From: Mytilus californianus
Lineage: Eukaryota
DNA length: 64,000 nucleotides
Assembly: GCF_021869535.1 (NCBI RefSeq)
Contig: NW_026262668.1
Coordinates: 13,082,001 to 13,146,000 of the forward strand
Reading direction: 5' to 3'
Shown: positions 1-36,953 of the stretch, piece after piece
Position numbering within the stretch: position 1 is the first letter of the stretch
Layout of the letters: every line of letters starts with the position of its first letter
Program-made: the position numbers and the translations under genes
The notes under the pieces: generated by a model
Told to the model about the DNA's origin: nothing
The model's database searches: none
Seen by the model: the letters and a program-made list of their open reading frames with translations, nothing else

Positions 1-101
1 ATATATATATATATATAGATTGCCTAACAATGTAATTTTAACACACTATTTAGTATGTAAATATAAGAATGTTTAAAATATTTACAAAATGATGAAAATA
101 A

Positions 102-140
102 ACGCAATATTTCGCTAGACTAACTAGCTTTATCAAGCGT
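102..140 (-). ncRNA. Second identical copy of the PLE pLTR hammerhead candidate
   Basis: Exact reverse complement of 1719-1757. Confidence 0.6.
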
Positions 141-387
141 GCATCTATCCAGGTGAAATCGGATGTAGATGATAAGAAACTTTTGCAGCTCAATGTATAT
201 GTTGCACTTGAATTTAGCTGCCTAGAAAATAATACATAATTTGGATGAAGTTCAAGATTTTTACAAAATTGGTAGTTGAAGTTAGCAACGTCCATTGGCC
301 AATATTACAGGATAAAAAAGACGATGCTGTGTACTAAATTATTCTTTATCTTTCCTGTATCTTTTCTCATCTTTTTCGTTAAGACCA

Positions 388-744
388 TCAGGTTCTAAAG
401 TGTGGAGTTGGTGGATCCAAAAATTTTCTCCTTCTCGCCGTGGTGTCCCACTCGGTGTTGACTTCTATGATTTGGAAGGTAACATTATCAAAAGAATGTT
501 TCGTTGAACGAAGATGTCTTGTGAGAGGACAGTTTTTGTTGGTTTTGTACCATGAACGATGGTTATTGAGCCGAATATTAAATTTGTCCATTGTTTCTCC
601 CACATACTGAATGCCACATGTGTTACATGTTAATATATAAATTGAGTTCTCCGTTTTACAGTTGGAATTTGAGTAGATGGTATAATTTTGTTTAGTAACG
701 GAGCTGATGAAAGAACTGCTTGTATTGGCAGCTTTACAACACAA
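388..744 (-). pseudogene. GIY-YIG endonuclease, frameshifted copy
   Basis: IYILTCNTCGIQYVGET, RLNNHR. A 5-bp deletion relative to the other arm removes the ENFWI...GLN end. Confidence 0.88.
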
Positions 745-1127
745 GCAGTTTGTAGCAACCGGGAGATGGAGTAGGCTGCTTTGCTAATACAGATGTCACT
801 AATTTGTCACGGATGTTTTTAGGTCTTCTGAAGGCCATGACTGGTGGTGAGGAAAATACTTTTTTAAGATTTGAATCATTTTCTATAATTTTCCAATGCT
901 TCTGAACAATGGAAGACACATTTTTAAAATCAGGATGGTAAGTGAGTACAAGGGGTGTTCTGTTAGCTGCTTTATTCTTATCTTTGTACTCTAGAAGTTC
1001 TTGGCGACTAGTTTTGTTTGCTCTTTCGAAAGCGCTATCAATGATGTTGTTATTGTATCCTCGAACAACTAGATGTTTACGTAGTTGTCCAAGTCTAGCA
1101 TTTTGCGTATTTTCAGTAGAGCATATT
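734..1127 (-). pseudogene. PLE reverse transcriptase C-terminal (thumb/linker) fragment
   Basis: ICS...RGY...RTPLVLTYHP...VFSSPPVMAFRRPKNIRDKLV are typical PLE post-RT motifs. The fragment is truncated at the 1127/1128 junction and frameshifted in the Cys-rich linker. Confidence 0.88.
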
Positions 1128-1520
1128 AATACAAGCAGTTCTTTCATCAGCTCCGTTACTAAACAAAATTATACCATCTACTCAAATTCCAACTGTAAAA
1201 CGGAGAACTCAATTTATATATTAACATGTGACACATGTGGCATTCAGTATGTGGGAGAAACAATGGACAAATTTAATATTCGGCTCAATAACCATCGTTC
1301 ATGGTACAAAACCAACAAAAACTGTCCTCTCACAAGACATCTTCGTTCAACGAAACATTCTTTTGATAATGTTACCTTCCAAATCATAGAAGTCAACACC
1401 GAGTGGGACACCACGGCGAGAAGGAGAAGAGAAAATTTTTGGATCCACCAACTCCACACTTTAGAACCTGATGGTCTTAACGAAAAAGATGAGAAAAGAT
1501 ACAGGAAAGATAAAGAATAA
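1128..1520 (+). pseudogene. GIY-YIG endonuclease domain, intact reading frame but no native start (inverted arm)
   Basis: IYILTCDTCGIQYVGET...R..NHR...RRRENFWI...EPDGLN. The first ~62 aa of ORF 942..1520 are only antisense of the RT thumb. Confidence 0.9.
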
Positions 1521-1718
1521 TTTAGTACACAGCATCGTCCTTTTTATCCTGTAATATTGGCCAATGGACGTTGCTAACTTCAACTACCAATTTTGTAAAA
1601 ATCTTGAACTTCATCCAAATTATGTATTATTTTCTAGGCAGCTAAATTCAAGTGCAACATATACATTGAGCTGCAAAAGTTTCTTATCATCTACATCCGA
1701 TTTCACCTGGATAGATGC

Positions 1719-1757
1719 ACGCTTGATAAAGCTAGTTAGTCTAGCGAAATATTGCGT
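1719..1757 (+). ncRNA. Candidate minimal type I hammerhead ribozyme, U3-A8 core variant, in the PLE 3' UTR/pLTR
   Basis: ACGC / TTGATAA-A / GCTAG-ttagt-CTAGC / GAA / ATAT / T / GCGT. It has a 4-bp stem I, a 5-bp stem II with G10.1-C11.1 and a palindromic stem III. Confidence 0.6.
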
Positions 1758-1932
1758 TTATTTTCATCATTTTGTAAATATTTTAAACATTCTTATATTT
1801 ACATACTAAATAGTGTGTTAAAATTACATTGTTAGGCAATCTATAATTTTATCTGTGTAATTGAATTAATCTCTGTACTGATTAATCCACACTCCCATAG
1901 ATTTGTATGTCATGTGCTGCTATTTATAGGCA

Positions 1933-2890: not shown

Positions 2891-3205
2891 GATAAGAAAC
2901 CCTCTCTTGGGTTATAGATTAAAGGTACTGACTCAGTGCAGAAGTTTTTTTTTACAGTTTTACCTTTATTTGTCTTTGTATTATTATGTTCCATTTGATT
3001 GTATGACTTTTGGCGTGGTTCGGTATATGTGATCCAGCTTTCCGGTTTTTGGTTTTTGTCGTTCCTTATGCGGGTGGTTCCGGGGATGCAATTCGGACAC
3101 AATGTTGTTTTCATTTTGTAAACCCTTGTATTTATGTTTTACTTATTTTGTATTTTATCTGGAAAGTGTATATGTCATTATGCTTTACTATACTATAAAT
3201 TTTAG

Positions 3206-3890
3206 AAGATGTGGTATGATTGCCAATGAGACAACTCTCTACCAGATACCAAATGACATGGAAGTTAACAACTATAGGTCACCGTACGGCCTTCAACAAT
3301 AGAAAAACCCATACCGCTATAAAAAGGCCCGAAATGACAAATGTAAGACAATTCAAACGAGAAAACTAACGGCCAGAATTATGTACAAAACAATGAACGA
3401 AAAAAATTATATACAGCAACAAACGACAACCACTGAATTACAGACTCCTGACTTGGGACAGGCACATACAAAATGTGTCGGGGTTAAACATGTTTGAAGG
3501 CGCCAACCCTCCCCAAATTGAAACAGTGGTATAACGGCACAACACATGAACACACTATGCAAAACAATAAACAAAAAAACAAATATGAGAAACAGCAAAT
3601 AACGACAACCACTTAATTACATGCTTCTGACTTGGGACAGGCACATAAAGAATGTCGTGGGGTAAAACATGTTTGCTGGCGCGCCAAAACCCTCCCCCTA
3701 ACCTTGGACAGTGGTGTAACAATACAGCATATGAACAAACTATAAAAATCAGTTGAAAAATACTGAACTCATCAGATCGATACAAAGCAAAAAAACAACT
3801 AACCAATACACATACCGGACGTGGCAGGGTATTTATATACTGACTGACTTTAAAAACGCAACACTCATTTTGTTGATTTTTTTTCCCACA
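3206..3890 (-). mobile_element. Abundant dispersed 3' module (ends CATTGGCA(A/C)TCATACCACATCTT), with internal ~170-bp duplication
   Basis: Same sequence order as 47221-47630 and 30190-30560. Confidence 0.8.
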
Positions 3891-4719
3891 TCATGTTTGA
3901 TTCTCATACAACTACTATTAATGCTTACCATACTTCTTTCTCTTAAGAAAAAAACAACATCTGACTTACCTGTGGTTATTGAACATACCGGATTTTTGAA
4001 GTCGCACGAATTTCTTAAAGCGAAATTTGGAACCCATAAAAGATTTTTTCAGTTTGTTTTGCTACGTGAAACAGTTCTTTCAATCCTTGGCCACACTTAA
4101 ATCAGTTAAAAAATGTTGCATCTCCATATTGCCAAGACTGAGGAATAAAAAAAACTGAATCAACCCATAAGAATACCGCAAACAGGAAAACGTGAACGTG
4201 CTGCAACCATACAGTTTGACTTCAGAAACTCGTCTTACTGTCCTCCCGACAACGATACAGGTAAACGGGATTTGTTACTGACCATCAATGACCAGATCAA
4301 CATGTAGTGACAATGCAACGTCAATAGAATTTGATTACGCAACGTCATTTGAGAGACATGTTTACGGCCGCAACGTCAACTGCTTATCAAATTGCCGAAT
4401 GCCATTGCGCACAGATTTATGCCTTAAACGTTTCCCATAAACTGAACTGCCGAAGAATCGACTGAAGAAAAACATTTAAAGCCCTGAAGTTTCCACCGCA
4501 TAATTGCCAAATACCATTGTAATGGGTGGAACAAACGCATATTCAGAATGTGTAAAACAGAACCCAAAACATGTGGAACAGAAAAAGGTTGATCTTTCTG
4601 ACAATCATCTTGGCGTTTGTTACAGGCAGTCATTGCTTTTGACGGTGCCACATTCATTAAAAAAATTAAAAAGAATAATCTAGTGTTGCGTTTCTAAAGT
4701 CGGTCAGTATACTTCCCAA

Positions 4720-11887: not shown

Positions 11888-12369
11888 TTTTAATGAAATA
11901 TTATTATTTTTTGTTAAAATAGATATTTTCCAACAATTTATGTTTTATTTCTTTGTGAAATTCATGTTCGGATTATTATTATTTCAAATTCAACAATGAT
12001 TTGTTGTGGCAGGTTGAAAATATAAAAAAATGACAATGTTTAAAATTTCTTTTGATACTAGAAATAACATGTTACTAAATCACAAAGGACAAGGTTTGTT
12101 TTTTCCAAAACGATGGCTTTCAATTTCAACTTAATCAAAAATGTCACAGTTTGGTCCCGAAATGGATCTATTTAAAATGCGTGAATGCTAAGTAAAACAA
12201 ATTTATCATAAAAGTACACTAGAAACTCCAATGTATAACCACGTGTTATCCGATGGAGAATGTCTGTCATAAAGGTGTCACATGTTTAGCAGGCACAATG
12301 TATAATAAAATTAAAATTTGATATGGCGGCATGGTTATTCACATTATCATCCTGTACGAGAGACAAAAT

Positions 12370-12675
12370 AGCTGATCTGAAAGTTACATCATCTACTTGC
12401 CACTATACATCATGTACTGTGTTACAACCCTAGATAAAGCCGACAAGGAAAGGCATTTCATCGACTACCGAAAGCTATACTTTTTTATGTAACCTAGGTG
12501 GTCGAGTGGTCTAGGGCGCTGGACATGGTGCAGGCGGTGTTGCCACGATGTCTATCAGCTATTAGAGTAATTATGAATATAATATGTGTTTTCAGTCGTG
12601 TATCACCTTCGCTGGTGATCCAATGCATGGATCTGTCGCAGAGTTGACGTACTTATCAATATATATATATATACC
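12370..12675 (+). mobile_element. Diverged copy of the 442-bp tRNA-headed repeat family, ending in (TA)n
   Basis: Homologous to 34215-34380 (leader + A-box) and to 34075-34145 (tail). Confidence 0.75.
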
Positions 12676-13183
12676 TATAATTTGATAGAAATCATTATTT
12701 CTCTTCCCTCTTAGTCATTTTTAGTGTCACTACTTCATTGCAGTGTACTGCCGTGAAGTAGATTTGAAGTTTCTTGTCATTTTAATGTTCTAATCTCTTT
12801 TGATTTAACGTCGATATGTTAAAAGCACTTTTCCAAATTAAGAAACTGTACAGTTAAAAAAAATAATATAAACCAAAAAGTACACGAAAATTGTGTTCAC
12901 GTACATTGCAAGTACAATTTCTACAATAAAGAAAAAATTGATAATCGGTGTAGCTTCTAAATTGAATTTCCGTAGTCTAGTAGGTTTTTTAAGGTTTATA
13001 ATAGCTTTTCCTATTTACAAGATAAGCGAAATATGTTAATTATAATCAATACTGATTGGGAAAATAATATTAAGCAATAATTTGGTTAATCCCGAAAAAA
13101 AAATGCTACTTCTATAGACAGTAAGAAATTTAAATTTTCATCAGTTTCCATCGTTCAAAATAAGATTTCTGGTTTAAATGAAC

Positions 13184-20606: not shown

Positions 20607-21827
20607 TTAAACACTGGCTTTCATACCAGTTATATGTTCGTTTTCTGAATCAACGATTCTATATGCGACTATTTTGTTGGCTTTCGTATCACCATATGTA
20701 ATAAAAAGCATGTAATTGTTTTGAAAAAATCGGATTGTCACTGCCTGTGGTCGTTTCATGCCCATGTGTGCCGTAACGATGTGTTGCACAAACTTCCCAT
20801 CACTAGAGAACATTGATACTCTATTATTGTAATAGTCTGCTACAATAATATTGTCTTCATGGTCTGTACATATACCATGCGGAAATTTAAGCTCTCCATC
20901 ATTGCTTCCATATTTTCCAAATGATTTAATGTGATCTCCATGTCTGTCAAAAAGTCGTATGCAGTGATTTCCTGAATCTGACACAACAATGTTACCAGAA
21001 TGTGACAATGTAACATGACGAGGGGATTTCAAAGAAAAACTGCTTTCATCGTCTTCTGGTATTGTCCTGATAAGTTCACCTTTATCGGAAAAAATATGGA
21101 TTTTATTTTGTCTGATATCGGAAACTATATATCTGTTTCTCCTATCTACGATTACACCACTTGGATATTCTAGTACATCTTCCCCAAATCTTAATTTTTC
21201 TATCCCAGCGCAAGACATAACGGAAATACATCTTTCTCTACTTAACGCAACTGCAAAAGCCCCACTTGGTGTAGCTGCAGCAGTCCACGGTTCTGACCGT
21301 TTGCTTACTTGGATACTTTTGACCAACCGACCGCTACCGGTATAGATCAGCAAACTGCTATTGAGAACGTCAGTTACAATAACGGTGCCATTGTATATAT
21401 GATATATTCCTGTTCCATTACGTAGTTGACCTTGTTCTGAACCCGTATTTCCAAATCTATTATATAGGTAAGCTTTAAACCTATTGCCAGCTTGTTCATA
21501 TTCGTCGAGTAGAGAGAAAGTTCTGACTTTTCGAAGACCCTGTTCTTCCCTTGATATAATCGAAATAGTGTCCTCCTTTTTCAGTAAACTTAAAAAATCT
21601 TCGCGCTCGAATGATGCACATGATACTATACTATCCTTGTGTTTCATATGTCCCAAATTAGGGAACAATTCTCCGTACCCACTGTCTCCTTCACTGTCTA
21701 TATCTTCTGTCATGATACTAAGTCCTGGATTATCAAACCCACCTATGTCAAAGGAGACCCTTCGTTGGCGGCGAATTAGTACTGGGGATGATGGTTTATT
21801 TGATTTACTTGCACCTGGAATGAACAT
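20607..21827 (-). CDS. NHL-repeat (beta-propeller) protein related to the TRIM2/3/71 NHL domain, without RING/B-box, with a ~115-aa acidic/Ser-rich N-terminus
   Basis: 406-aa uninterrupted ORF. NHL repeats include PSGVIVDRRNRYIVSDIRQNKIHIF, PRHVTLSHSGNIVVSDSGNHCIRLF and FGKYGSNDGELKFPHGICTDHEDNIIVADYYNNRVSMF. An in-frame TAA lies just upstream of the ATG (21846-21848). Confidence 0.93.
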   Translation of the reverse strand: MFIPGASKSNKPSSPVLIRRQRRVSFDIGGFDNPGLSIMTEDIDSEGDSGYGELFPNLGHMKHKDSIVSCASFEREDFLSLLKKEDTISIISREEQGLRKVRTFSLLDEYEQAGNRFKAYLYNRFGNTGSEQGQLRNGTGIYHIYNGTVIVTDVLNSSLLIYTGSGRLVKSIQVSKRSEPWTAAATPSGAFAVALSRERCISVMSCAGIEKLRFGEDVLEYPSGVIVDRRNRYIVSDIRQNKIHIFSDKGELIRTIPEDDESSFSLKSPRHVTLSHSGNIVVSDSGNHCIRLFDRHGDHIKSFGKYGSNDGELKFPHGICTDHEDNIIVADYYNNRVSMFSSDGKFVQHIVTAHMGMKRPQAVTIRFFQNNYMLFITYGDTKANKIVAYRIVDSENEHITGMKASV

Positions 21828-28357: not shown

Positions 28358-28947
28358 CTTACTGCAGACAAGTGTTAATACAATAGCAGTGTTGCGTTAT
28401 TATGCTATAGGTTGCTAGAACTTATATTATTAATTATATATAGTCAGGTTATAGAATGTGGACATTTTTTATGCACTGGCCAACTTAAGAGTTTGTTTGT
28501 TTTTTGGGTTTTTTTTTTTTTTTTTTTATAAAATGACTAAATTAGTCTTATCAGATGATGTACGACTTGTAAACAACAGATCATAATGAAAACACAATCT
28601 TAATCAATCTTTAATTGTTAAACTGTTACCTTAATTATCTAGTCATTCATCAAAACTTATCAGTAGCTATCAATATGCCTTTTGACAATGAATTAAGGTA
28701 AACAAAACACTCGTGACTATCAGAAGATGCATACATAAATTGGGGTATTAGTTCTGTTAACCCCTAGGTTATCCGATAGAGAAAATATGCCGTAGAGTTG
28801 TCACATATCTAGACGATTTAAATAAAACATATTGATATGACTGCATGGTTAGTACTGTTATCATCGTTTACGACTGTCAAAAAGAGCTCATCTGCATGAC
28901 ATTTTATGTATTTGCCACCATACACATCATGCACTGCGTAACAATCC

Positions 28948-29326
28948 TTGATGAAGCCTAGTAGGAAATGCATCACTCGGCTTTCAAAAATTATATTTTA
29001 TATAGACTAGTTAGCCGAGATGTTTAGGGCGCCTGAGACAGTACACGAGTAGTAACTGCGAGAAGCTAGGGTTCAAATGTCGATGAGGGAACACAAACAC
29101 TGCCACCTGCATATATGAAAGGTTTCTAAGCACAGTAATGTATAATTGAAAAAGAAAATTCGTAATAACACAAAGAATAACGTGAAAATAAATGTTAGCG
29201 ATCTCAGCACCCAAAATATCCGATGAGCCAATACGACGGCTGAAAGCGCTAACAACTATTGCTTTCAATTTTGTTTTGGACTTGAACGTTACTGATGAAG
29301 GTTAATCCACAAAAATGCTTCAGACG
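28948..29326 (+). ncRNA. Three degenerate hammerhead-like motifs in ~380 bp
   Basis: TTGATGA..ATGCAT-C (28948-28974); CCGATGA-GCC..GGC-T-GAA-AGCGCT-A (29220-29251); CTGATGA-AGGttaatCC..AAATGCTT-C-AGACG (29292-29326). Confidence 0.45.
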
Positions 29327-31098: not shown

Positions 31099-32786
31099 AG
31101 AGTACAAAATATTAATTTCTGATATAACTTATTTGTTTAATATACCAGCTACAATAACTACATTTATTTTGACAAGATCCTTCCATTTACAATGATTTTT
31201 TATCACTATATGTGTTGAAAATTTTGAACCTCAATGCTCAAAGTCATACTGATCTCAACACAAGGCTATACAATAAAGGATCTAAATGCTTTATGGTCTC
31301 GGACATCGTAAACACTTTGTTTTCAGTTATGTTAGAAAAAATTGCATGAACATGTATGTGCACATTTAAGTTTATTGACAACTTTGTGTGTGTGTATGCC
31401 ACTAACAACTCATTATCAGAAATTAACACGAGGGATTTTGATGTTTTATTGAAAAAACTACTTTATAAAAAATAGTTTTCTTATACACATTGTGGGTGAA
31501 AACATAAAATATACACATTCAAGTAAAAGAAACAATAACATCAACGGTGATAATTTTACTGCACAAGATGCACATTTTGACAATTAAGTATTTGCTTCAA
31601 AAACCTTATGCAAATGTTGAAAAGATGGCGAACCTAAAGAACATTCAAACTAGGACAAGGAATCGGACTGATAAAGTCCTTTATTTAATGTTTTGGAAGT
31701 TGTTAACATAACTAATTAACCACAACAAGCTTATTGTTATTGGAACAGCCAATCGGAACAGCTCATACAGTTCCTTAAAATACAACCGTCTGCAAAAACA
31801 GAGCTTAAGCTCTTATGTGGTAAAATGTAATATTAGTTGGAAAAACAAATGTCTTTAAAATAAAAAAAAAAAAACGTTTAACGGTTATAATACAAAACAA
31901 AATAAAAGACATTTTATTTACAAAGTCTGCAAAAACAAATAAGGAAATAATTAAAATATTAATAAAAAGTGAAATTTCAATAAATTCCCTTATATTAATT
32001 GGAAAACATGTTCTATAGGTTTCTTCAACATCATCAAGCATTGTGCATTGTATAAATGCAAACTATATAAAAATCATCGACGATTGAGAAGGAAGTTAAA
32101 ACAATTGTACCTATCATTGTAATGTTCTTTTTGTCTGTTGGAAGTAATAAACCATATTATGATAAGGACTTTTCTAGAAACGGATATTTGACAGGTTTAC
32201 TCACTTTTGGTCTATATTTTAAGTCTGCGTGTTAAAAATTCTCACAATTCACCATATTTTGGTGAAATGGTTAAAAATCTTGGTTGTGAAAGACAACAAT
32301 AATAATCATATTTTCCAAAATTACGTTTACATTGGTATTCTTCATAACACTTTAACATGTATAAGTAAAATCTCCATCTTTACATTTCCTAGTTATATAT
32401 GCTTTATTCTAAAATATAACTTATGAAGCAAAGGATTCTCATTTTTGCAATGATTATATGATATAGATCAACATGTATACAACATGAAAAAATAAAGAAT
32501 CTAGAAGTGCGAATTGAAACGAAAACAAGTGTTAATGATAAAATAGAGATAGCTTCGGAGTTCAGTTCAAAGTTGTGATTTAACTTTGCATTCATTCGTA
32601 CTATTCTTAGTAACCAAGTCTTTAGCACTTTTAACGGTTACTTCTCATCTTTGTTTTTATTGATAACAAACGAGGGACATATCTTCTGAACACAAATTAC
32701 AATTCCCCTTTAATAAGTATATTTTTTTGCAAAGAAATGATTCAGAAACAAATATATTCATATATCTAATATATATATTATATGCT

Positions 32787-32882
32787 ATTCAGGGGTCAGA
32801 CAGGGTATATAATGTGACGGCTCAGGGAATATAAACTCTAAGCCGGGAATGTTACATTATATACCCTGTCTGAAACCTGAAT
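32787..32882. repeat. Fold-back with 32-bp arms at the left end of a ~490-bp putative non-autonomous DNA element (to ~33262)
   Basis: Arms 32787-32818 and 32851-32882. Confidence 0.8.
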
Positions 32883-33305
32883 TACACATATATTACGGAT
32901 TACCCCTGCCTTAATGTTTTTTCGAGTACCAGACATTTGTTAAACATTCACCACGCAGTATATATATTTTCTGCATACGTGAGGGATATAGTTATTTGCT
33001 GTGAAAATAATTTCATCGTGTGATATAATTAGTAATAACACTTTAAGACATTAATTAAGAAATTGATGTTTAAATCACGTGATTTAAAATTAAAAACGTA
33101 TTATCGACGGATACACATCCTTATTTTCCCTCTGTGAGCCTCTGACGTTCTGTATAGCTTAAGACTACGTCACATAGTAACGTTCGTTATGATGACGTTG
33201 TTGAGGTTCCAATCCGGTAGAAAAACGTCGTATATACCCCGGCAGTTTCCTGAATATATGCTCTCATCCCTATGTTGTTATCCAATCACAAAACTCGACA
33301 CATTT

Positions 33306-33660
33306 ACAAGTCTAAATTGAAAACAACGTTCAAATCTATGACTGCGTTGGATAAAAACCGCAATTTTTATACGTGTGCATGCAAAACAAATTTCTTGGTA
33401 GAGAGGTCTGAATACAGCACAAACAACATTTTCCGAAAGACCAAAAAAGTGAAAAAGTATATTTTAACAAAACGCATTTGACTAACAGGTCGAACAATTG
33501 ATGTTCTTAAACCCTGCTGACTGCCATTGGCGATTGCCAATTAAACATATCATATGATGTAGAAAAATGGATCTTAAAATTATTAATTTAATACCAAACA
33601 AAAAACAATAAACTTGCGGAAAAGATGGTATACCGCAAATATGAGGTGCAAAAATTTGTA
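33306..33660 (-). mobile_element. Inverted partial copy of the 533-bp hammerhead repeat
   Basis: Reverse complement of ~35175-35520. A 20-bp 3'-tip copy follows at 33673-33692 between TA tracts. Confidence 0.9.
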
Positions 33661-33692
33661 TATATATATATATACAAGTCTAAATTGAAAAC

Positions 33693-33731
<39 letters not shown>

Positions 33732-34499
33732 TACGTCTGAACCAATGACAACTCTACAACAGATTTATCCATAGGATCACCAGCAGTGATGGTGATACAT
33801 GGCTGTGTACATTCTGTATATACAACTCGTCTAAACATCAACAATGTTAGATCTGTAAATTTGCTTTCGCAAATTTTAAGTTCTTCCCTCGCCGGGATTC
33901 GAACTCGTCTAGCGCGTCGGATACAGTGCAGTCGATTTGGTGTCACGATATCTCAGTTGCATGAGTTCGAATCCCGGCGAGGGAAGACCTAAACATTTGC
34001 GAAAGCAAACTTACAGATCTAACATTGTTGGGCTGATGTTTAGACGAGTTGTATATACAGAATGTACACAGCCATGTATCACCATCACTGCTGGTGATCC
34101 GATGAATAAATCTGTTGTAGAGTTGTCACTGGTTCAGACGTATTTATAAAATATAATTATTTCTGTGACTGTATCTTGCATTAATTTGTAGGATCCTTTA
34201 CAATGAATATTTCAGCTGATCTGTAACAATTCCATCTTCAAGCCTTATATATCATGTACTATATTACGACGCTAGATTAAAATTGACGAGAGAAGGTAAC
34301 ACCCGGCCACCGAAATCTTTATTATTGTGAAGCCTAGGTGGTCAAGTGGTCTAGCGCGTCGGATACAGTGCAGGCGATTTGGTGTCACGATATCTCAGTA
34401 GCATGAGTTCGAATCCCGGCAAGGGAAGAACTAAAGATTTGCGAAAGCAAATTTACAGATCTAACATTGTTGGGCTGATGTTTAGACGAGTTGTATATA
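33732..34499 (+). mobile_element. 442-bp tRNA-headed non-coding repeat: 175-bp inverted segment + 1.3 tandem units, inside (TA)n
   Basis: Arms 33732-33906 and 33963-34142. GTCTAGCG at 33907 and 34349 gives a period of 442. A-box TGGTCAAGTGG at 34339-34349 and B-box GTTCGAATCC at 34407-34416. Confidence 0.9.
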
Positions 34500-34597
34500 T
34501 ATATGATACGTTCATCCTGTTTCGACTCTTTAAAATTCAAGAGTCTATCCTAAATTGAGGTAAATTATATGGCCTTCCAAGTACCGTTTTGATCCCT

Positions 34598-34643
34598 AAC
34601 ATCACTGAAGAGACATTAATTGTCGAAATCCGGATATGGTGTT
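34598..34643 (+). ncRNA. Minimal type I hammerhead ribozyme with intact catalytic core
   Basis: AACATCA / CTGAAGA / GACA-ttaat-TGTC / GAA / ATCCGGAT / A / TGGTGTT. It has a 7-bp stem I, a 4-bp stem II and an 8-nt palindromic stem III. Predicted cleavage is after AUA at 34636. Confidence 0.85.
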
Positions 34644-35130
34644 CAAATTTTTGCACCTTATGTTTGCGATATACCATCTTTTCCACGAGTTTATTGTTTT
34701 CTGTTTGGTATTAAATTTTTAATTTAGATCCATGATACATCTGGTGATCAATTTATTTGGCAATTGCCAATGGCAGTCAGCAGGGTTTAAGAACATCAGT
34801 TGATCGACCTGTTAGTCAAATGCGTTTTGTTAAAATATACTTTTCACTTTTTGGTCTTTTGGAAAATGTTGTTTGTGCTGTATTTAGACCCCTCTAACAA
34901 GAAATTTCTTTTACGGCACACGTATAAAAATTGCGGTTTTTATCCAACGCAATCATAGGTTTGAACGTTGTTTTCAATTTAGACTTGTTTATATTTTTTC
35001 GTTTGGGCTAGTATTATATTTTCCTTCGGGTTTATATGATCCGTTCATCCTATTTCGACTCTTTAAAATTCAAGAGTCTATCCTAAATTGAGGTAAATTA
35101 TATGGCCTTCCAAATACCGTTTCGATCCCT

Positions 35131-35176
35131 AACATCACTGAAGAGACATTAATTGTCAAAATCCGGATATGGTGTA
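35131..35176 (+). ncRNA. Second hammerhead copy with G12->A substitution
   Basis: Same as 34598-34643 except that GAAA is AAAA at 35158 (a CpG site) and the terminal stem I base differs. Confidence 0.75.
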
Positions 35177-36802
35177 CAAATTTTTGCACCTTATGTTTGC
35201 GATATACCATCTTTTCCGCAAGTTTATTGTTTTCTGTTTGGTATTAAATTTTTGATTAAGATCAAATTACATCTGGTGATCAATTTATTTGGCAATTGCC
35301 AATGGCAGTCAGCAGGGTTTAAGAACATCAGTTGTTCGACCTGTTAGTCAAATGCGTTTTGTTAAAATATACTTTTCACTTTTTAGTCTTTTGGAAAATG
35401 TTGTTTGTGCTGTATTAAGACCCCTCTACCAAGAAATTTGTTTGACATGCACACGTATAAAAATTGCAGTTTTTATCAAACGCAATCATAGGTTTGAACG
35501 TTGTTTTCAATTTAGACTTGTTTATATATATATATAAATAATGTCATAGCGTTAGAAAAGAATTGACCGAATTTTGTGATTCAAAACCTGATAGTGCCAA
35601 CAGTATTGAAATTTAACATCTTGAATATCTAACACATTTTAAGCAAGTAAGCAGTTTAATCATTTCTGGGTCGTTAATGAAATGCATCGGATTGTCAAGT
35701 GCTCGCAAATGCATGTTACTGATTTCTAGTTTACCATTATTTTTTAATCAAAGTCATTTGACATTTTACATATTGCTACAAAATGAAAATATGTTCGACA
35801 TCCGAGAATTAATGTTCACTGAATATAACTAAAATACGTTGGCCGTTTCAGAATCTAAAGAACTATGGGTTATTTAATTGTACCTACCCCAAAAAGAAAA
35901 TAACGTCACGTCATTGGTTGCATTTACATTGTTTATGACGTTTTAGTGTACATTTTTGGGAATATCACCCAGATTGCATTAGATTCTGAAACGGCGAATT
36001 ATGCGAAATGTTCTACATTCGATGTTTTATCTAAAAGTAGGAAAGCAACTGTTACAGTCCAATAGTTGATTGTTTCCGTTAGACTGTAATTTGGTTGCAG
36101 TCTATAATTATGTAAAATATCTCCAAAGTGTTTAAACGTGAAATGTATACTTTTTGGGAAAATAAATAAATTATAAAGAATTGATTTTTTTTCTTTTCAG
36201 CAAAATCCAAATTTTTGGAATTGTTTTCAGAATTGCATCTATTTGGTAAAAATTGTGTGATTACCTCTGGATCTGCACCACGGTGCCATTCTATTGCAAA
36301 AAAATAAGTCTGAAAAGAGTTGCCAGTTTATTGGAAATTTAAGTTAATTCTATGTATATTTTCTAATGATATGCATTTAAAAACATAAATTGAGTAAAAT
36401 ATCAGTCGACAATGTCACCTTTTTTTAATTCATTTCAAATTAAATTAAAACACTTATTAAACTTGTATTAATTGGTACATATGTAGAACGACCCAAATGA
36501 ATGCCTTGGTATCATAGAACGCCTAGTATAAAAACGATGATTGATCATCGACAATCTAGACAAATTGAATATGATTTCTTTTATCAAACTTTAGTGGTTT
36601 TAATCTCCCGTAAATGGCAATGTTTTGCAGTAGAACATGTCTATAATGTCATATACATTAATTTGTTATGTTCAATTACTTATCTTTGTACACAGTTTCG
36701 TGTTTACTATCTAGATATTATTTATTTTCTTTTTCCGTCTACTTTTTAATAATATCATTTCCTTGAAAGGTCGATCGGACAGTTTGGACTAAGCACACTT
36801 TT

Positions 36803-36953
36803 NNNNNNNNNNNNNNNNNNNNNNNNNNNNNNNNNNNNNNNNNNNNNNNNNNNNNNNNNNNNNNNNNNNNNNNNNNNNNNNNNNNNNNNNNNNNNNNNNN
36901 NNNNNNNNNNNNNNNNNNNNNNNNNNNNNNNNNNNNNNNNNNNNNNNNNNNNN
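36803..36953. other. Assembly gap (151 N)
   Basis: Run of N. Confidence 1.

What the first reader, a model, noticed from the sequence alone, without database searches (positions are those of the whole stretch)
33306..35534. Nested cluster: two unrelated non-coding elements with the same inverted-plus-tandem, TA-anchored architecture as the Penelope element
Seen: the outer element is inverted part 33306-33660 plus tandem 34501-35522. The inner element, inside the intervening (TA)n, is inverted part 33732-33906 plus tandem 33907-34499. Ends fall at internal TA-like words that merge with the microsatellite: GACTTGT|TTATAT, GAGTTG|TATATA, GACGTA(C/T)|T..TATA, and GGCAATC|TATA in the PLE. A stray 20-bp 3' tip lies at 33673-33692. 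Inference: a three-member system of an autonomous PLE, a ribozyme-processed parasite and a Pol III-type parasite, all using TA-microhomology priming and turning (TA)n into a landing pad. This is my best candidate for an undescribed system, but enzyme sharing is not shown by sequence alone.
Basis: partly seen in the sequence, partly recalled or inferred. Interest (0 to 1): 0.85.

Follow-up and report, generated by a model that had tools for sequence, protein, structure and literature searches.

The report
Two Penelope-style retroposons piled in (TA)n
In a mussel genome, copies of two unrelated non-coding jumping elements, a hammerhead-ribozyme repeat of a known class and a less usual one with a tRNA-like module, sit packed into one TA repeat with the scars typical of Penelope-like retrotransposons; most of this is known biology.

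Summary
The outer family is a 533-bp unit present as 1.9 tandem units, a 355-bp inverted 5'-truncated copy and an inverted 20-nt 3' tip. The inner family is a 442-bp unit present as 1.35 tandem units plus an abutting inverted arm. Both lie in and around TA tracts.

The outer family is a very abundant, expressed hammerhead tandem repeat: a new, larger member of the metazoan non-LTR retrozymes already reported in Mytilus. Other windows of this scan noted it before.

Tandem/inverted insertions, short end tails and (TA)n bias are published hallmarks of Penelope-like elements (PLEs). Retrozymes as PLE parasites is also a published hypothesis. So the "undescribed three-member system" is mostly known.

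The less ordinary part is the inner family:
- It has a degenerate tRNA-like A/B-box module and no ribozyme.
- It has no PBS, PPT, poly-A or TSD.
- Its hairpin-plus-partial-tandem geometry matches the PLE in the same window.
- It is strongly expressed in sense in a related species.

No PLE-dependent SINE-like family turned up in the literature I could search.

Three points remain unproven: enzyme sharing, Pol III transcription and TA-microhomology priming. The outer inverted copy came from a different template than the tandem. No long reads were available to confirm the locus.

The parts
33306..33660 (-). Outer family (533-bp hammerhead repeat): inverted, 5'-truncated copy. Its 3' end (GACTTGT) faces left into ordinary sequence. 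Its 5' end stops 6-7 nt short of the hammerhead cut site and abuts (TA)8.
   Evidence: It is 9.3% plus 8 gap columns from both direct units, so it came from a different template.
33659..33674 (.). (TA)8 tract between the inverted outer copy and the tip
33674..33693 (-). Stray 20-nt copy of the outer family's 3' terminus, TA tracts on both sides
   Evidence: exact 17/17 match at 33674-33690
33694..33731 (.). TA-rich tract and (AT)14 microsatellite
33732..33906 (-). Inner family (442-bp unit): inverted arm, reverse complement of 33963-34148. With the 56-nt loop 33907-33962 it forms a fold-back.
   Evidence: (I2, I9)
33907..34057 (+). Inner family: upstream partial unit, 5'-truncated inside the tRNA-like module and running to the unit's TATATA word
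   Evidence: D3: 33902-34057 vs 34344-34499, 95%
34058..34499 (+). Inner family: one full 442-bp unit. It ends at its own TATATA word, which merges into the next element's TATAT.
   Evidence: DNA word depth is roughly even across it.
34344..34426 (+). Degenerate tRNA-like module (A-box-like TCTAGCGCGTCGG from 34350, B-box-like AGTTCGAATCC from 34406). Its 5' half pairs with upstream 34256-34300 in a hairpin kept in three diverged copies.
   Evidence: ARAGORN finds it only at an 80% threshold, on the sister copy 33902-33984. No Rfam tRNA hit. Hairpin. Sense RNA coverage in a related species jumps from 7 to 286 reads between 34316 and 34335.
34500..35032 (+). Outer family unit 1, including the 43-bp spacer 34990-35032 that is present only between units
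34598..34643 (+). Intact type I hammerhead: helix I AACAUCA/UGGUGUU, core CUGAAGA, helix II GACA/UGUC, GAAA, helix III 2 bp with CCGG loop. Predicted cut after A34636.
   Evidence: Strict motif scan, the only hit in the window on either strand. Read from the sequence. Rfam models miss it.
35033..35522 (+). Outer family unit 2, ending GACTTGT inside its TTATAT word. Its hammerhead (35131-35176) has G12 changed to A at 35158.
35523..35536 (.). (TA)7 tract at the right edge of the cluster
12228..12658 (+). Old, diverged copy of the inner family (more than one unit, with an internal deletion). (AT)7 sits at its TA word.
   Evidence: nhmmer E 9e-26 and 6e-06
28766..29093 (+). Second diverged copy of the inner family, keeping A- and B-box-like motifs; no TA flank
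   Evidence: nhmmer E 2e-15
7..1852 (+). Penelope-like element fragment (GIY-YIG ORF 942-1520) as a fold-back: arms about 720 bp and 99-100% complementary, loop 401 bp, both outer ends GGCAATC next to TA

Best explanation
The stretch is a pile-up of at least three or four separate retroposition events by two unrelated, non-coding, non-autonomous families at one TA-rich site in a Mytilus-type mussel genome.

Outer family. This is a non-LTR retrozyme: a 533-bp tandem repeat whose units each carry a canonical metazoan type I hammerhead. It is extremely abundant and transcribed.

Inner family. This is a 442-bp repeat with no ribozyme. It carries a degenerate tRNA-like A/B-box module that probably acts as an internal Pol III promoter.

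Mechanism (inferred). Both families are copied by the reverse transcriptase and GIY-YIG endonuclease of Penelope-like elements, which nick at or near (TA)n.
- DNA synthesis starts on the RNA at a TA-rich word.
- It runs across unit boundaries on multimeric or circular RNA, or jumps between RNA ends. This gives partial tandems.
- It can turn back on its own product. This gives the inverted arm with a short loop.

Shown here:
- the anatomy
- the hammerhead motif
- expression of both families
- the family-wide run of the outer 3' end into (AT)n
- the same fold-back geometry in a coding PLE 32 kb away

Inferred, not shown:
- which enzyme copies them
- Pol III use
- ribozyme cutting
- whether TA matching guides priming
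For: Anatomy and coordinates.

Hammerhead:
- It has helix I of 6-7 bp, helix II of 4 bp, and helix III of 2 bp with a palindromic CCGG loop. It is the only strict hit in 128 kb of both strands.
- This architecture matches the canonical metazoan type described in PMC4209133.

Outer family, from the laid reads:
- Summed contig depth is about 10 times that of the inner family.
- 63 RNA reads from 47 starts cross the unit junction 35032 to 34500.
- 66 reads leave 34994 into an (AT)n consensus, at a local depth of about 195.

Inner family:
- Stranded RNA of a related species covers it in sense at up to about 1350x. Coverage starts 15-34 nt upstream of the A-box-like motif.
- That species' copies carry a perfect B-box GGTTCGAATCC (34406 A>G).
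- A- and B-box-like motifs are kept in copies about 27% diverged.
- No PBS, PPT or TG..CA ends, and no match to published Mytilus Helenus or biv-TRIM.

Link to PLEs:
- The inner fold-back (arms about 180 bp, loop 56) has the same geometry as the PLE at 7-1852 (arms about 720 bp, loop 401, TA at both outer ends).
- All three 3' ends used here by the two families share TTYAGAC, then 3-6 nt, then a TA word.

Literature:
- PLE tandem/inverted insertions, end tails and (TA)n bias: PMC8557442.
- Mytilus retrozymes: PMC7229834.
- Retrozymes as PLE derivatives.
Against: - No sequence is shared between either family and the only coding PLE in the window.
- No pile-up of RNA ends at the predicted hammerhead cut site (table 6).
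- The outer monomer folds no better than shuffles (z -0.54), unlike the highly paired retrozyme circles described in the literature.
- Rfam finds neither a hammerhead nor a tRNA even at E up to 10. ARAGORN needs an 80% threshold.
- The 5' half of the tRNA-like module is locked in a conserved hairpin with upstream sequence. That fits poorly with a transcript starting at the module.
- No T4 terminator occurs in this copy of the unit.
- Family-wide end data for the inner family are lacking. In the related species its TATATA and GACGTA 'ends' are simply continuous with the next part of the unit.
- Outside the cluster, repeat ends in the window are not enriched at TA tracts (1 seen, 1.25 expected).
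- The TTYAGAC motif was defined after looking at the ends.
Confidence: 0.6

Rival explanations
1. The inner family is a small LTR-type element (a TRIM with a Pol III promoter in its terminal repeat, like Helenus). Integrase of a Gypsy-type element inserted it, and it was rearranged later. On this view the 156-bp direct repeats are its LTRs and 34058-34343 is its internal region.
For: - A direct repeat holding the tRNA-like module flanks a 286-bp internal part.
- The repeat in copy 1 ends ...TATATACA, and a TG lies upstream of the module.
- DNA depth of the repeat part is about twice that of the internal part.
- Helenus families occur in Mytilus, and some bivalve ones look like tRNA-Thr, the same type as the relaxed ARAGORN call.
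- TRIMs can form tandems.
Against: - No TGG-type PBS follows the repeat. No G-rich PPT lies before it. No TSD can be seen.
- Published Mytilus Helenus consensus sequences have all of these. They share none of six 10-13-mers tried from the inner unit, apart from a generic B-box word that matched only oyster families.
- The upstream repeat is 5'-truncated and fused to an inverted arm.
- Size and signature motif do not fit biv-TRIM.
Confidence: 0.12
2. The shared look comes from DNA-level events rather than a shared enzyme. On this view (TA)n tracts grow by slippage out of the TA-rich words that both families carry, and such tracts, being fragile and cruciform-prone, provoke fold-back duplications and unequal exchange. 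That would produce inverted arms and truncated tandems after ordinary insertion.
For: - Every TA 'anchor' coincides with a TA word that belongs to the unit itself.
- In the old copy at 12591-12682 the alignment to the unit runs through the (AT)7, as if the tract had grown inside the element.
- The 11-bp TA stretch at 34494-34504 is just the two elements' own words placed end to end.
- Window-wide there is no enrichment of repeat ends at TA tracts outside the cluster.
Against: - The (TA)8 at 33659-33674 abuts a 5'-truncated end and a 20-nt tip that have no TA word of their own.
- Four or five pieces of two unrelated families in both orientations within 2.2 kb argues for repeated targeting.
- A coding PLE shows the same geometry with 99-100% identical arms.
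- (TA)n targeting by PLEs is published.
Confidence: 0.15
3. The nested arrangement is partly an assembly artefact. Reads from several copies of two very abundant families and from TA microsatellites may have been joined wrongly.
For: - PLE-type tandem/inverted structures are known to trouble assemblies (PMC8557442).
- The outer family has enormous depth.
- No listed contig from independent runs bridges the junctions.
- An N gap lies 1.3 kb away at 36803-36953.
Against: - The copies differ from one another by 4-10% with private substitutions and indels, so they are distinct loci-grade sequences, not collapsed reads.
- Each junction is simple.
- Other windows of the scan report similar structures; these are unchecked notes.
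Confidence: 0.07

Closest known systems
Metazoan non-LTR retrozymes (Cervera and de la Pena 2020, PMC7229834), reported in Mytilus galloprovincialis
   Same: - AT-rich non-coding tandem repeat
- one type I hammerhead per unit, with helix I 6 bp, helix II 4 bp and a short palindromic helix III
- dimers to multimers
- transcribed
- RNA reads cross the unit junction
   Different: - The unit is 533 bp, against 300-400 nt for the mussel circles reported.
- The monomer fold is no better than shuffles.
- Neither cutting nor circularity is shown here.
- One of the two hammerheads is mutated at G12.
[quoted passage not shown] 2021, PMC8557442)
   Same: - partial tandems (pseudo-LTRs)
- an adjacent inverted 5'-truncated copy
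- a short extra piece at one end
- (TA)n insertion bias
- no discernible TSD
   Different: - Both families here encode nothing and share no sequence with the PLE in the window.
- The published 'tail' is 30-40 bp, whereas the tip here is 20 nt and lies between TA tracts.
- The outer inverted copy is not from the same template as the tandem.
tRNA-derived SINEs of bivalves (Martelossi et al. 2024, PMC11481361)
   Same: - short, non-coding and abundant
- A- and B-box-like motifs
- sense transcripts
   Different: - The tRNA-like module is in the 3' third of the inserted unit, not at the 5' end.
- No LINE-derived tail, poly-A or 6-18-bp TSD.
- Partial tandem plus fold-back form.
- That survey considers only LINE partners.
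Helenus / TRIMp3 (Kojima 2024, PMC10886601) and biv-TRIM (Satovic et al. 2019, PMC6934838)
   Same: - a tRNA-like module inside a direct repeat that flanks a short internal region
- present in Mytilida
- can be tandem
   Different: - No PBS, PPT or TSD, and no clear TG..CA ends.
- The upstream repeat is truncated.
- An inverted arm is present.
- No word match to the published Mytilus consensus sequences.
- Dimensions and signature motif of biv-TRIM are absent.

Membership tests
Hammerhead ribozyme, type I (metazoan canonical) | Conserved core CUGANGA ... GAAA ... UH, with helices I, II and III in type I order | tested here: met
   34598-34643: CUGAAGA, GAAA, U-A before the cut. Helix I is 6-7 bp, helix II 4 bp with a G10.1-C11.1 pair, helix III 2 bp with a CCGG loop. 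Unit 2 fails, with G12 changed to A.
Hammerhead ribozyme, type I (metazoan canonical) | Match to curated Rfam hammerhead models | tested here: not met
   No hit at gathering score or at E up to 10. Short-helix-III dimeric forms are known to escape such models; that point is from my own knowledge.
Hammerhead ribozyme, type I (metazoan canonical) | Self-cleavage | tested here: inconclusive
   No pile-up of RNA read ends at 34636/34637 in two RNA runs. Fragmented libraries are a weak test, so a bench assay is needed.
Non-LTR retrozyme | Non-coding tandem repeat with a type I hammerhead in the units, low GC | tested here: met
   Period 533, 1.9 units here. No ORF over 82 aa. GC 0.32-0.34. The unit spacer is present at family level.
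Non-LTR retrozyme | Expressed as unit-length circular, highly self-paired RNA | tested here: inconclusive
   63 reads cross the unit junction, but genomic tandems give the same reads. The fold z-score of -0.54 does not support strong self-pairing.
PLE-mobilised (Penelope-type) insertion | Partial tandem with a variably 5'-truncated upstream copy | tested here: met
   Inner: a 151-bp partial unit before a full unit. Outer: 1.9 units.
PLE-mobilised (Penelope-type) insertion | Adjacent inverted 5'-truncated copy | tested here: met
   Inner: the arm abuts the direct copy with a 56-nt loop. Outer: an inverted copy is present, but it is separated from the tandem and came from another template.
PLE-mobilised (Penelope-type) insertion | Microsatellite (TA)n at insertion ends, no clear TSD, no poly-A | tested here: met
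   Four of five 3' ends in the cluster merge into TA tracts. The outer family-wide loose-end consensus is (AT)n. For the inner family only this locus is informative.
PLE-mobilised (Penelope-type) insertion | Sequence shared with an autonomous PLE (pseudo-LTR or 3' end), or co-distribution with one | tested here: not met
   No similarity to the PLE at 7-1852. Other PLE families of the genome could not be searched.
tRNA-derived SINE | Recognisable tRNA-derived head with A and B boxes at the 5' end | tested here: inconclusive
   A/B-box-like motifs are conserved. A cloverleaf appears only at an 80% ARAGORN threshold, and Rfam gives no hit. The module is not at the 5' end of inserted copies.
tRNA-derived SINE | LINE-type 3' tail or poly-A/microsatellite, and 6-18-bp TSDs | tested here: not met
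   No poly-A, no TSD, ends at internal TA words.
Helenus (TRIM with tRNA-like LTR) | TG..CA LTRs, PBS complementary to a tRNA 3' end right after the 5' LTR, PPT before the 3' LTR, 4-bp TSD | tested here: not met
   GAATGTACAC follows the repeat. No G-rich tract precedes it. No TSD is visible. Published Mytilus families show TTGGCGCCCAAC and GGGGGAAG.

The most novel reading that the evidence does not exclude
The inner 442-bp family may be the first SINE-like partner of Penelope-like elements.
- It would be a ribozyme-free, Pol III-driven parasite.
- Its tRNA-like promoter sits in the part that becomes the upstream partial copy, exactly as a PLE pseudo-LTR carries its promoter.
- It shares with the unrelated hammerhead retrozyme a short 3' signal, TTYAGAC followed by a TA word.
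- That signal would be what the PLE enzyme or the nicked (TA)n target recognises.

If so, PLE reverse transcriptases mobilise any RNA presenting this signal, and the hammerhead is dispensable for parasitism.
Probability: 0.3. Interest if true: 0.6.

Novelty: new variant of a known kind. Interest (0 to 1): 0.38.

Why it matters
How Penelope-like elements insert is still unknown. Their describers ask for a system that would explain the tandem/inverted forms and the microsatellite bias.

Suppose two unrelated short parasites carry the same scars and a common short 3' motif. They would then be compact natural substrates for defining what the enzyme needs. They would also show that the hammerhead is not required for hitch-hiking.

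Practically, families like these are very abundant in mussel genomes. They confuse assembly and repeat annotation, being neither SINE, TRIM nor satellite in the usual sense.

The retrozyme part adds only a larger family to a known class.

Tried and rejected
- Rfam over the whole window and, at E up to 10, over 33000-36000: no hammerhead, twister or tRNA.
- ARAGORN at default, with introns, and with -ps: nothing. Only -ps80 gives a poor cloverleaf.
- An upstream partial copy that I thought I saw by eye in the two diverged inner copies: local alignments were no better than shuffles, so I dropped it.
- More copies from public metagenome contigs: zero hits for both families.
- Earlier findings searched by sequence: blank.
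- Enrichment of repeat ends at TA tracts across the window: significant only because of this cluster, none outside it.
- Thermodynamic support for the hammerhead and for a rod-like retrozyme RNA: z-scores of -0.8 and -0.5, so no support.
- The commonest dispersed repeat of the window (3100-3900 family): it ends without TA and is unrelated.
- Literature search for a PLE-mobilised SINE: none in the held library, which proves nothing beyond that library.
Full report
**What is there.** The window is AT-rich (GC about 0.32), repeat-dense invertebrate DNA. Earlier notes of this scan identify the genome as a Mytilus mussel. The sequencing runs that hold the stretch are three coded species plus 'mollusc metagenome' RNA runs.

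**Outer family.**
- Two direct units lie at 34500-35032 and 35033-35522, period 533, 95% identical.
- A 355-bp inverted, 5'-truncated copy lies at 33306-33660.
- An inverted 20-nt copy of the 3' terminus lies at 33674-33693, between two TA tracts.

**Inner family.**
- An inverted arm lies at 33732-33906.
- It abuts a direct stretch, 33907-34499, that holds a 156-bp repeat at spacing 442. This is a 151-bp partial unit followed by one full 442-bp unit.
- The arm is the reverse complement of 33963-34148, so the arm, a 56-nt loop and the direct copy form a fold-back.

The families share no BLAST-level similarity. Nothing longer than 82 codons is open.

**The ends.** The unit-to-unit junctions show that the TA-rich words at the ends belong to the units themselves.
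- The outer unit has TTTATAT twice, at 34990-34996 and 35022-35028. These flank a short spacer that is present only between units. The array runs exactly from the second word to the first.
- The inner unit has TATATA at 34053-34058 and TTTATAAAATATAATTAT at 34149-34165. The direct copy stops at the first word and the inverted arm at the second.
- Four of the five 3' ends in the cluster merge into TA tracts. The exception is the outer inverted copy at 33306, which abuts ordinary sequence.
- I saw no poly-A and no target-site duplication.

**The outer family is a retrozyme.**
- A strict motif scan of both strands of the whole window returns one intact type I hammerhead, at 34598-34643.
  - Helix I is AACAUCA/UGGUGUU and the core is CUGAAGA.
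  - Helix II is GACA/UGUC, followed by GAAA.
  - Helix III is two base pairs with a palindromic CCGG loop.
  - The predicted cut is after A34636.
- This is the architecture that Cervera and de la Pena give for canonical metazoan hammerheads, which work as dimers in tandem repeats (PMC4209133).
- Rfam models do not find it. Folding energy gives no support.
- Unit 2 carries G12 changed to A at 35158 and should be inactive.

Reads laid on 34058-35040 add family-level data.
- The family's summed contig depth is about ten times that of the inner family and is fairly even along the unit, spacer included. Tandem arrays are therefore the common form.
- RNA of the same species covers it.
- 63 reads from 47 starts cross the 35032-to-34500 junction.
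- 66 reads, at a local depth of about 195, leave position 34994 into an (AT)n consensus. So family-wide, a sizeable share of 3' ends run into TA repeats.
- No pile-up of RNA ends marks the cut site.
- The monomer folds no better than shuffles.

Tandem hammerhead repeats of 300-400 nt that make circular RNA were described in M. galloprovincialis as non-LTR retrozymes and proposed to depend on PLEs (PMC7229834). A 2026 preprint argues the same from pseudo-LTR similarity. This family is therefore a new, larger member of a known class. Other windows of this scan had already noted it, two of them with follow-up to the same conclusion.

**The outer 'inverted plus tandem' is not one event.**
- Over the shared 344 columns the two direct units differ at 16 sites plus 2 gap columns.
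- The inverted copy differs from each unit at 32-33 sites plus 8 gap columns.
- I took 15 sites where unit 1 departs from the family majority seen in the reads. Units 1 and 2 share three of those derived states, and the inverted copy has none of them.
- The inverted copy therefore came from another template. Most simply it is a separate insertion into the same tract, as is the 20-nt tip.

This weakens 'same architecture' for the outer element. It strengthens the idea of repeated hits at one site.

**The inner family.** nhmmer finds two old relatives, at 12228-12553 plus 12591-12658, and at 28766-29093. All copies keep the order internal part, T-rich stretch, tRNA-like module.

Evidence on the tRNA-like module:
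- It has an A-box-like TCTAGCGCGTCGG and a B-box-like AGTTCGAATCC, conserved in the diverged copies.
- Default ARAGORN and Rfam see no tRNA. Only an 80% threshold yields a poor Thr-like cloverleaf.
- Its 5' half pairs with upstream sequence in a long hairpin kept in all three copies, with six pairs changed on both sides.

Evidence from stranded RNA of a related species:
- The family is covered in sense at up to about 1350x.
- Coverage jumps from 7 to 286 reads between 34316 and 34335, which is 15-34 nt upstream of the A-box-like motif.
- It runs through the unit end into the next unit's start, past GACGTA, and fades before the next module.
- That species' copies have a perfect B box.

This fits a Pol III unit of one repeat length, but divergence-limited mapping could give the same profile. 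This copy has no T4 terminator. One diverged copy has T6 just upstream of the module.

DNA contigs and RNA reads run through GACGTA (34148) without a break. So that 'end' is a truncation point at this locus, not the family terminus. I found no convincing hammerhead in the unit.

**LTR-type rival for the inner family.** A direct repeat with a tRNA-like module around a short internal part recalls Helenus, which occurs in Mytilus (PMC10886601).
- The published Mytilus consensus sequences show TGT..ACA repeats, a TTGGCGCCCAAC primer site, a GGGGGAAG purine tract and 4-bp duplications.
- The inner unit has none of these.
- Its words are absent from the published set, apart from a generic B-box word that matched only oyster families.
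- biv-TRIM differs in size, and its signature motif is absent.
- The upstream repeat here is truncated inside the module and fused to an inverted arm. Integrase-made insertions do not look like that.

I rate this rival at about 0.12.

**Link to PLEs.**
- Published descriptions of PLEs list partial tandems, an adjacent inverted 5'-truncated copy, a short extension at one end, (TA)n bias in Naiad and Neptune clades, and TSDs hidden by the microsatellite (PMC8557442).
- The window holds a PLE fragment with a GIY-YIG ORF.
  - It is built as a fold-back with arms of about 720 bp that are 99-100% complementary.
  - Its loop is 401 bp, and both outer ends read GGCAATC next to TA.
  - The inner family has the same geometry on a smaller scale.
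- Neither family shares sequence with this PLE, so that copy is not shown to be the partner.
- One possible common signal emerged. The three 3' ends used here read TTTAGAC-TTG-TTTATAT, TTCAGAC-GTA-TTTATAA and TTTAGAC-GAGTTG-TATATA.
  - The pattern occurs 9 times in the window against 1.7 in shuffles, with eight of the nine in this cluster.
  - I defined it after seeing the ends, so it is a lead and not a test.

**Mechanism.** The most likely reading (about 0.6) is that PLE enzymes nick at TA tracts. Reverse transcription then starts on a TA-rich word of a multimeric or circular RNA, and crossing unit junctions or jumping between RNA ends gives partial tandems. The nascent DNA sometimes folds back and copies itself, which gives the inverted arm with a short loop. 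These steps are inferred from anatomy.

The data do not separate microhomology-guided priming from endonuclease target choice. They also do not separate either from later growth of TA tracts out of the units' own words.
- The old copy at 12591-12682 aligns to the unit through its (AT)7, which fits growth.
- Outside this cluster, repeat ends in the window are not enriched at TA tracts.
- An assembly artefact cannot be excluded, because only short-read contigs were available and none spans the locus.

**Verdict.** Most of the 'system' is published biology. The retrozyme is a new member of a known class. The tRNA-like, ribozyme-free family with Penelope-type scars is the part worth following. No PLE-dependent SINE-like element appeared in the literature I could search.

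Noticed in passing
window 7-1852: The Penelope-like fragment is a fold-back whose 720-bp arms are 99-100% complementary. It is far younger than the 4-10% diverged non-autonomous copies, so it is either a very recent insertion or an assembly duplication.
   Followed up: partly
window 34565-34642 and 34752-34999: In the related species (run X22), only the hammerhead module and the 3' half of the outer unit are expressed, and they sit in other sequence contexts. The clean loose ends have 0.82-0.98 agreement. The hammerhead module seems to be shared among different repeat families across species.
   Followed up: no
window 34406: In the related species, the expressed copies of the inner family carry G here, which gives a perfect B box GGTTCGAATCC. 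In the window's own species fewer than 1% of the DNA words do, and expression there is about 30-fold lower.
   Followed up: no
window 34988/34397, 34479/34827, 34108/34599: DNA contigs of two independent runs show joints between the outer and inner families at other positions. This hints that the two lie side by side, or as chimeras, elsewhere in the genome. The matching sides are short (22-31 nt), so the evidence is weak.
   Followed up: no
window 32779-32890 and 35839-35998: Two small hairpin (MITE-like) elements flank the cluster, with arms of 40 nt (85% complementary) and 35 nt (83%). The first starts right after an (AT)5 tract.
   Followed up: no
window 20607-21827 (-): An ORF of 406 aa with NHL-repeat / six-bladed beta-propeller domains. 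It is the only clear host-type coding stretch seen in the window.
   Followed up: no
window 34256-34375: The long hairpin between the upstream 'leader' and the A-box half of the tRNA-like module is kept in three copies that are about 27% diverged, with six pairs changed on both sides. Its role is unknown, and it sits awkwardly with a transcript that starts at the module.
   Followed up: partly
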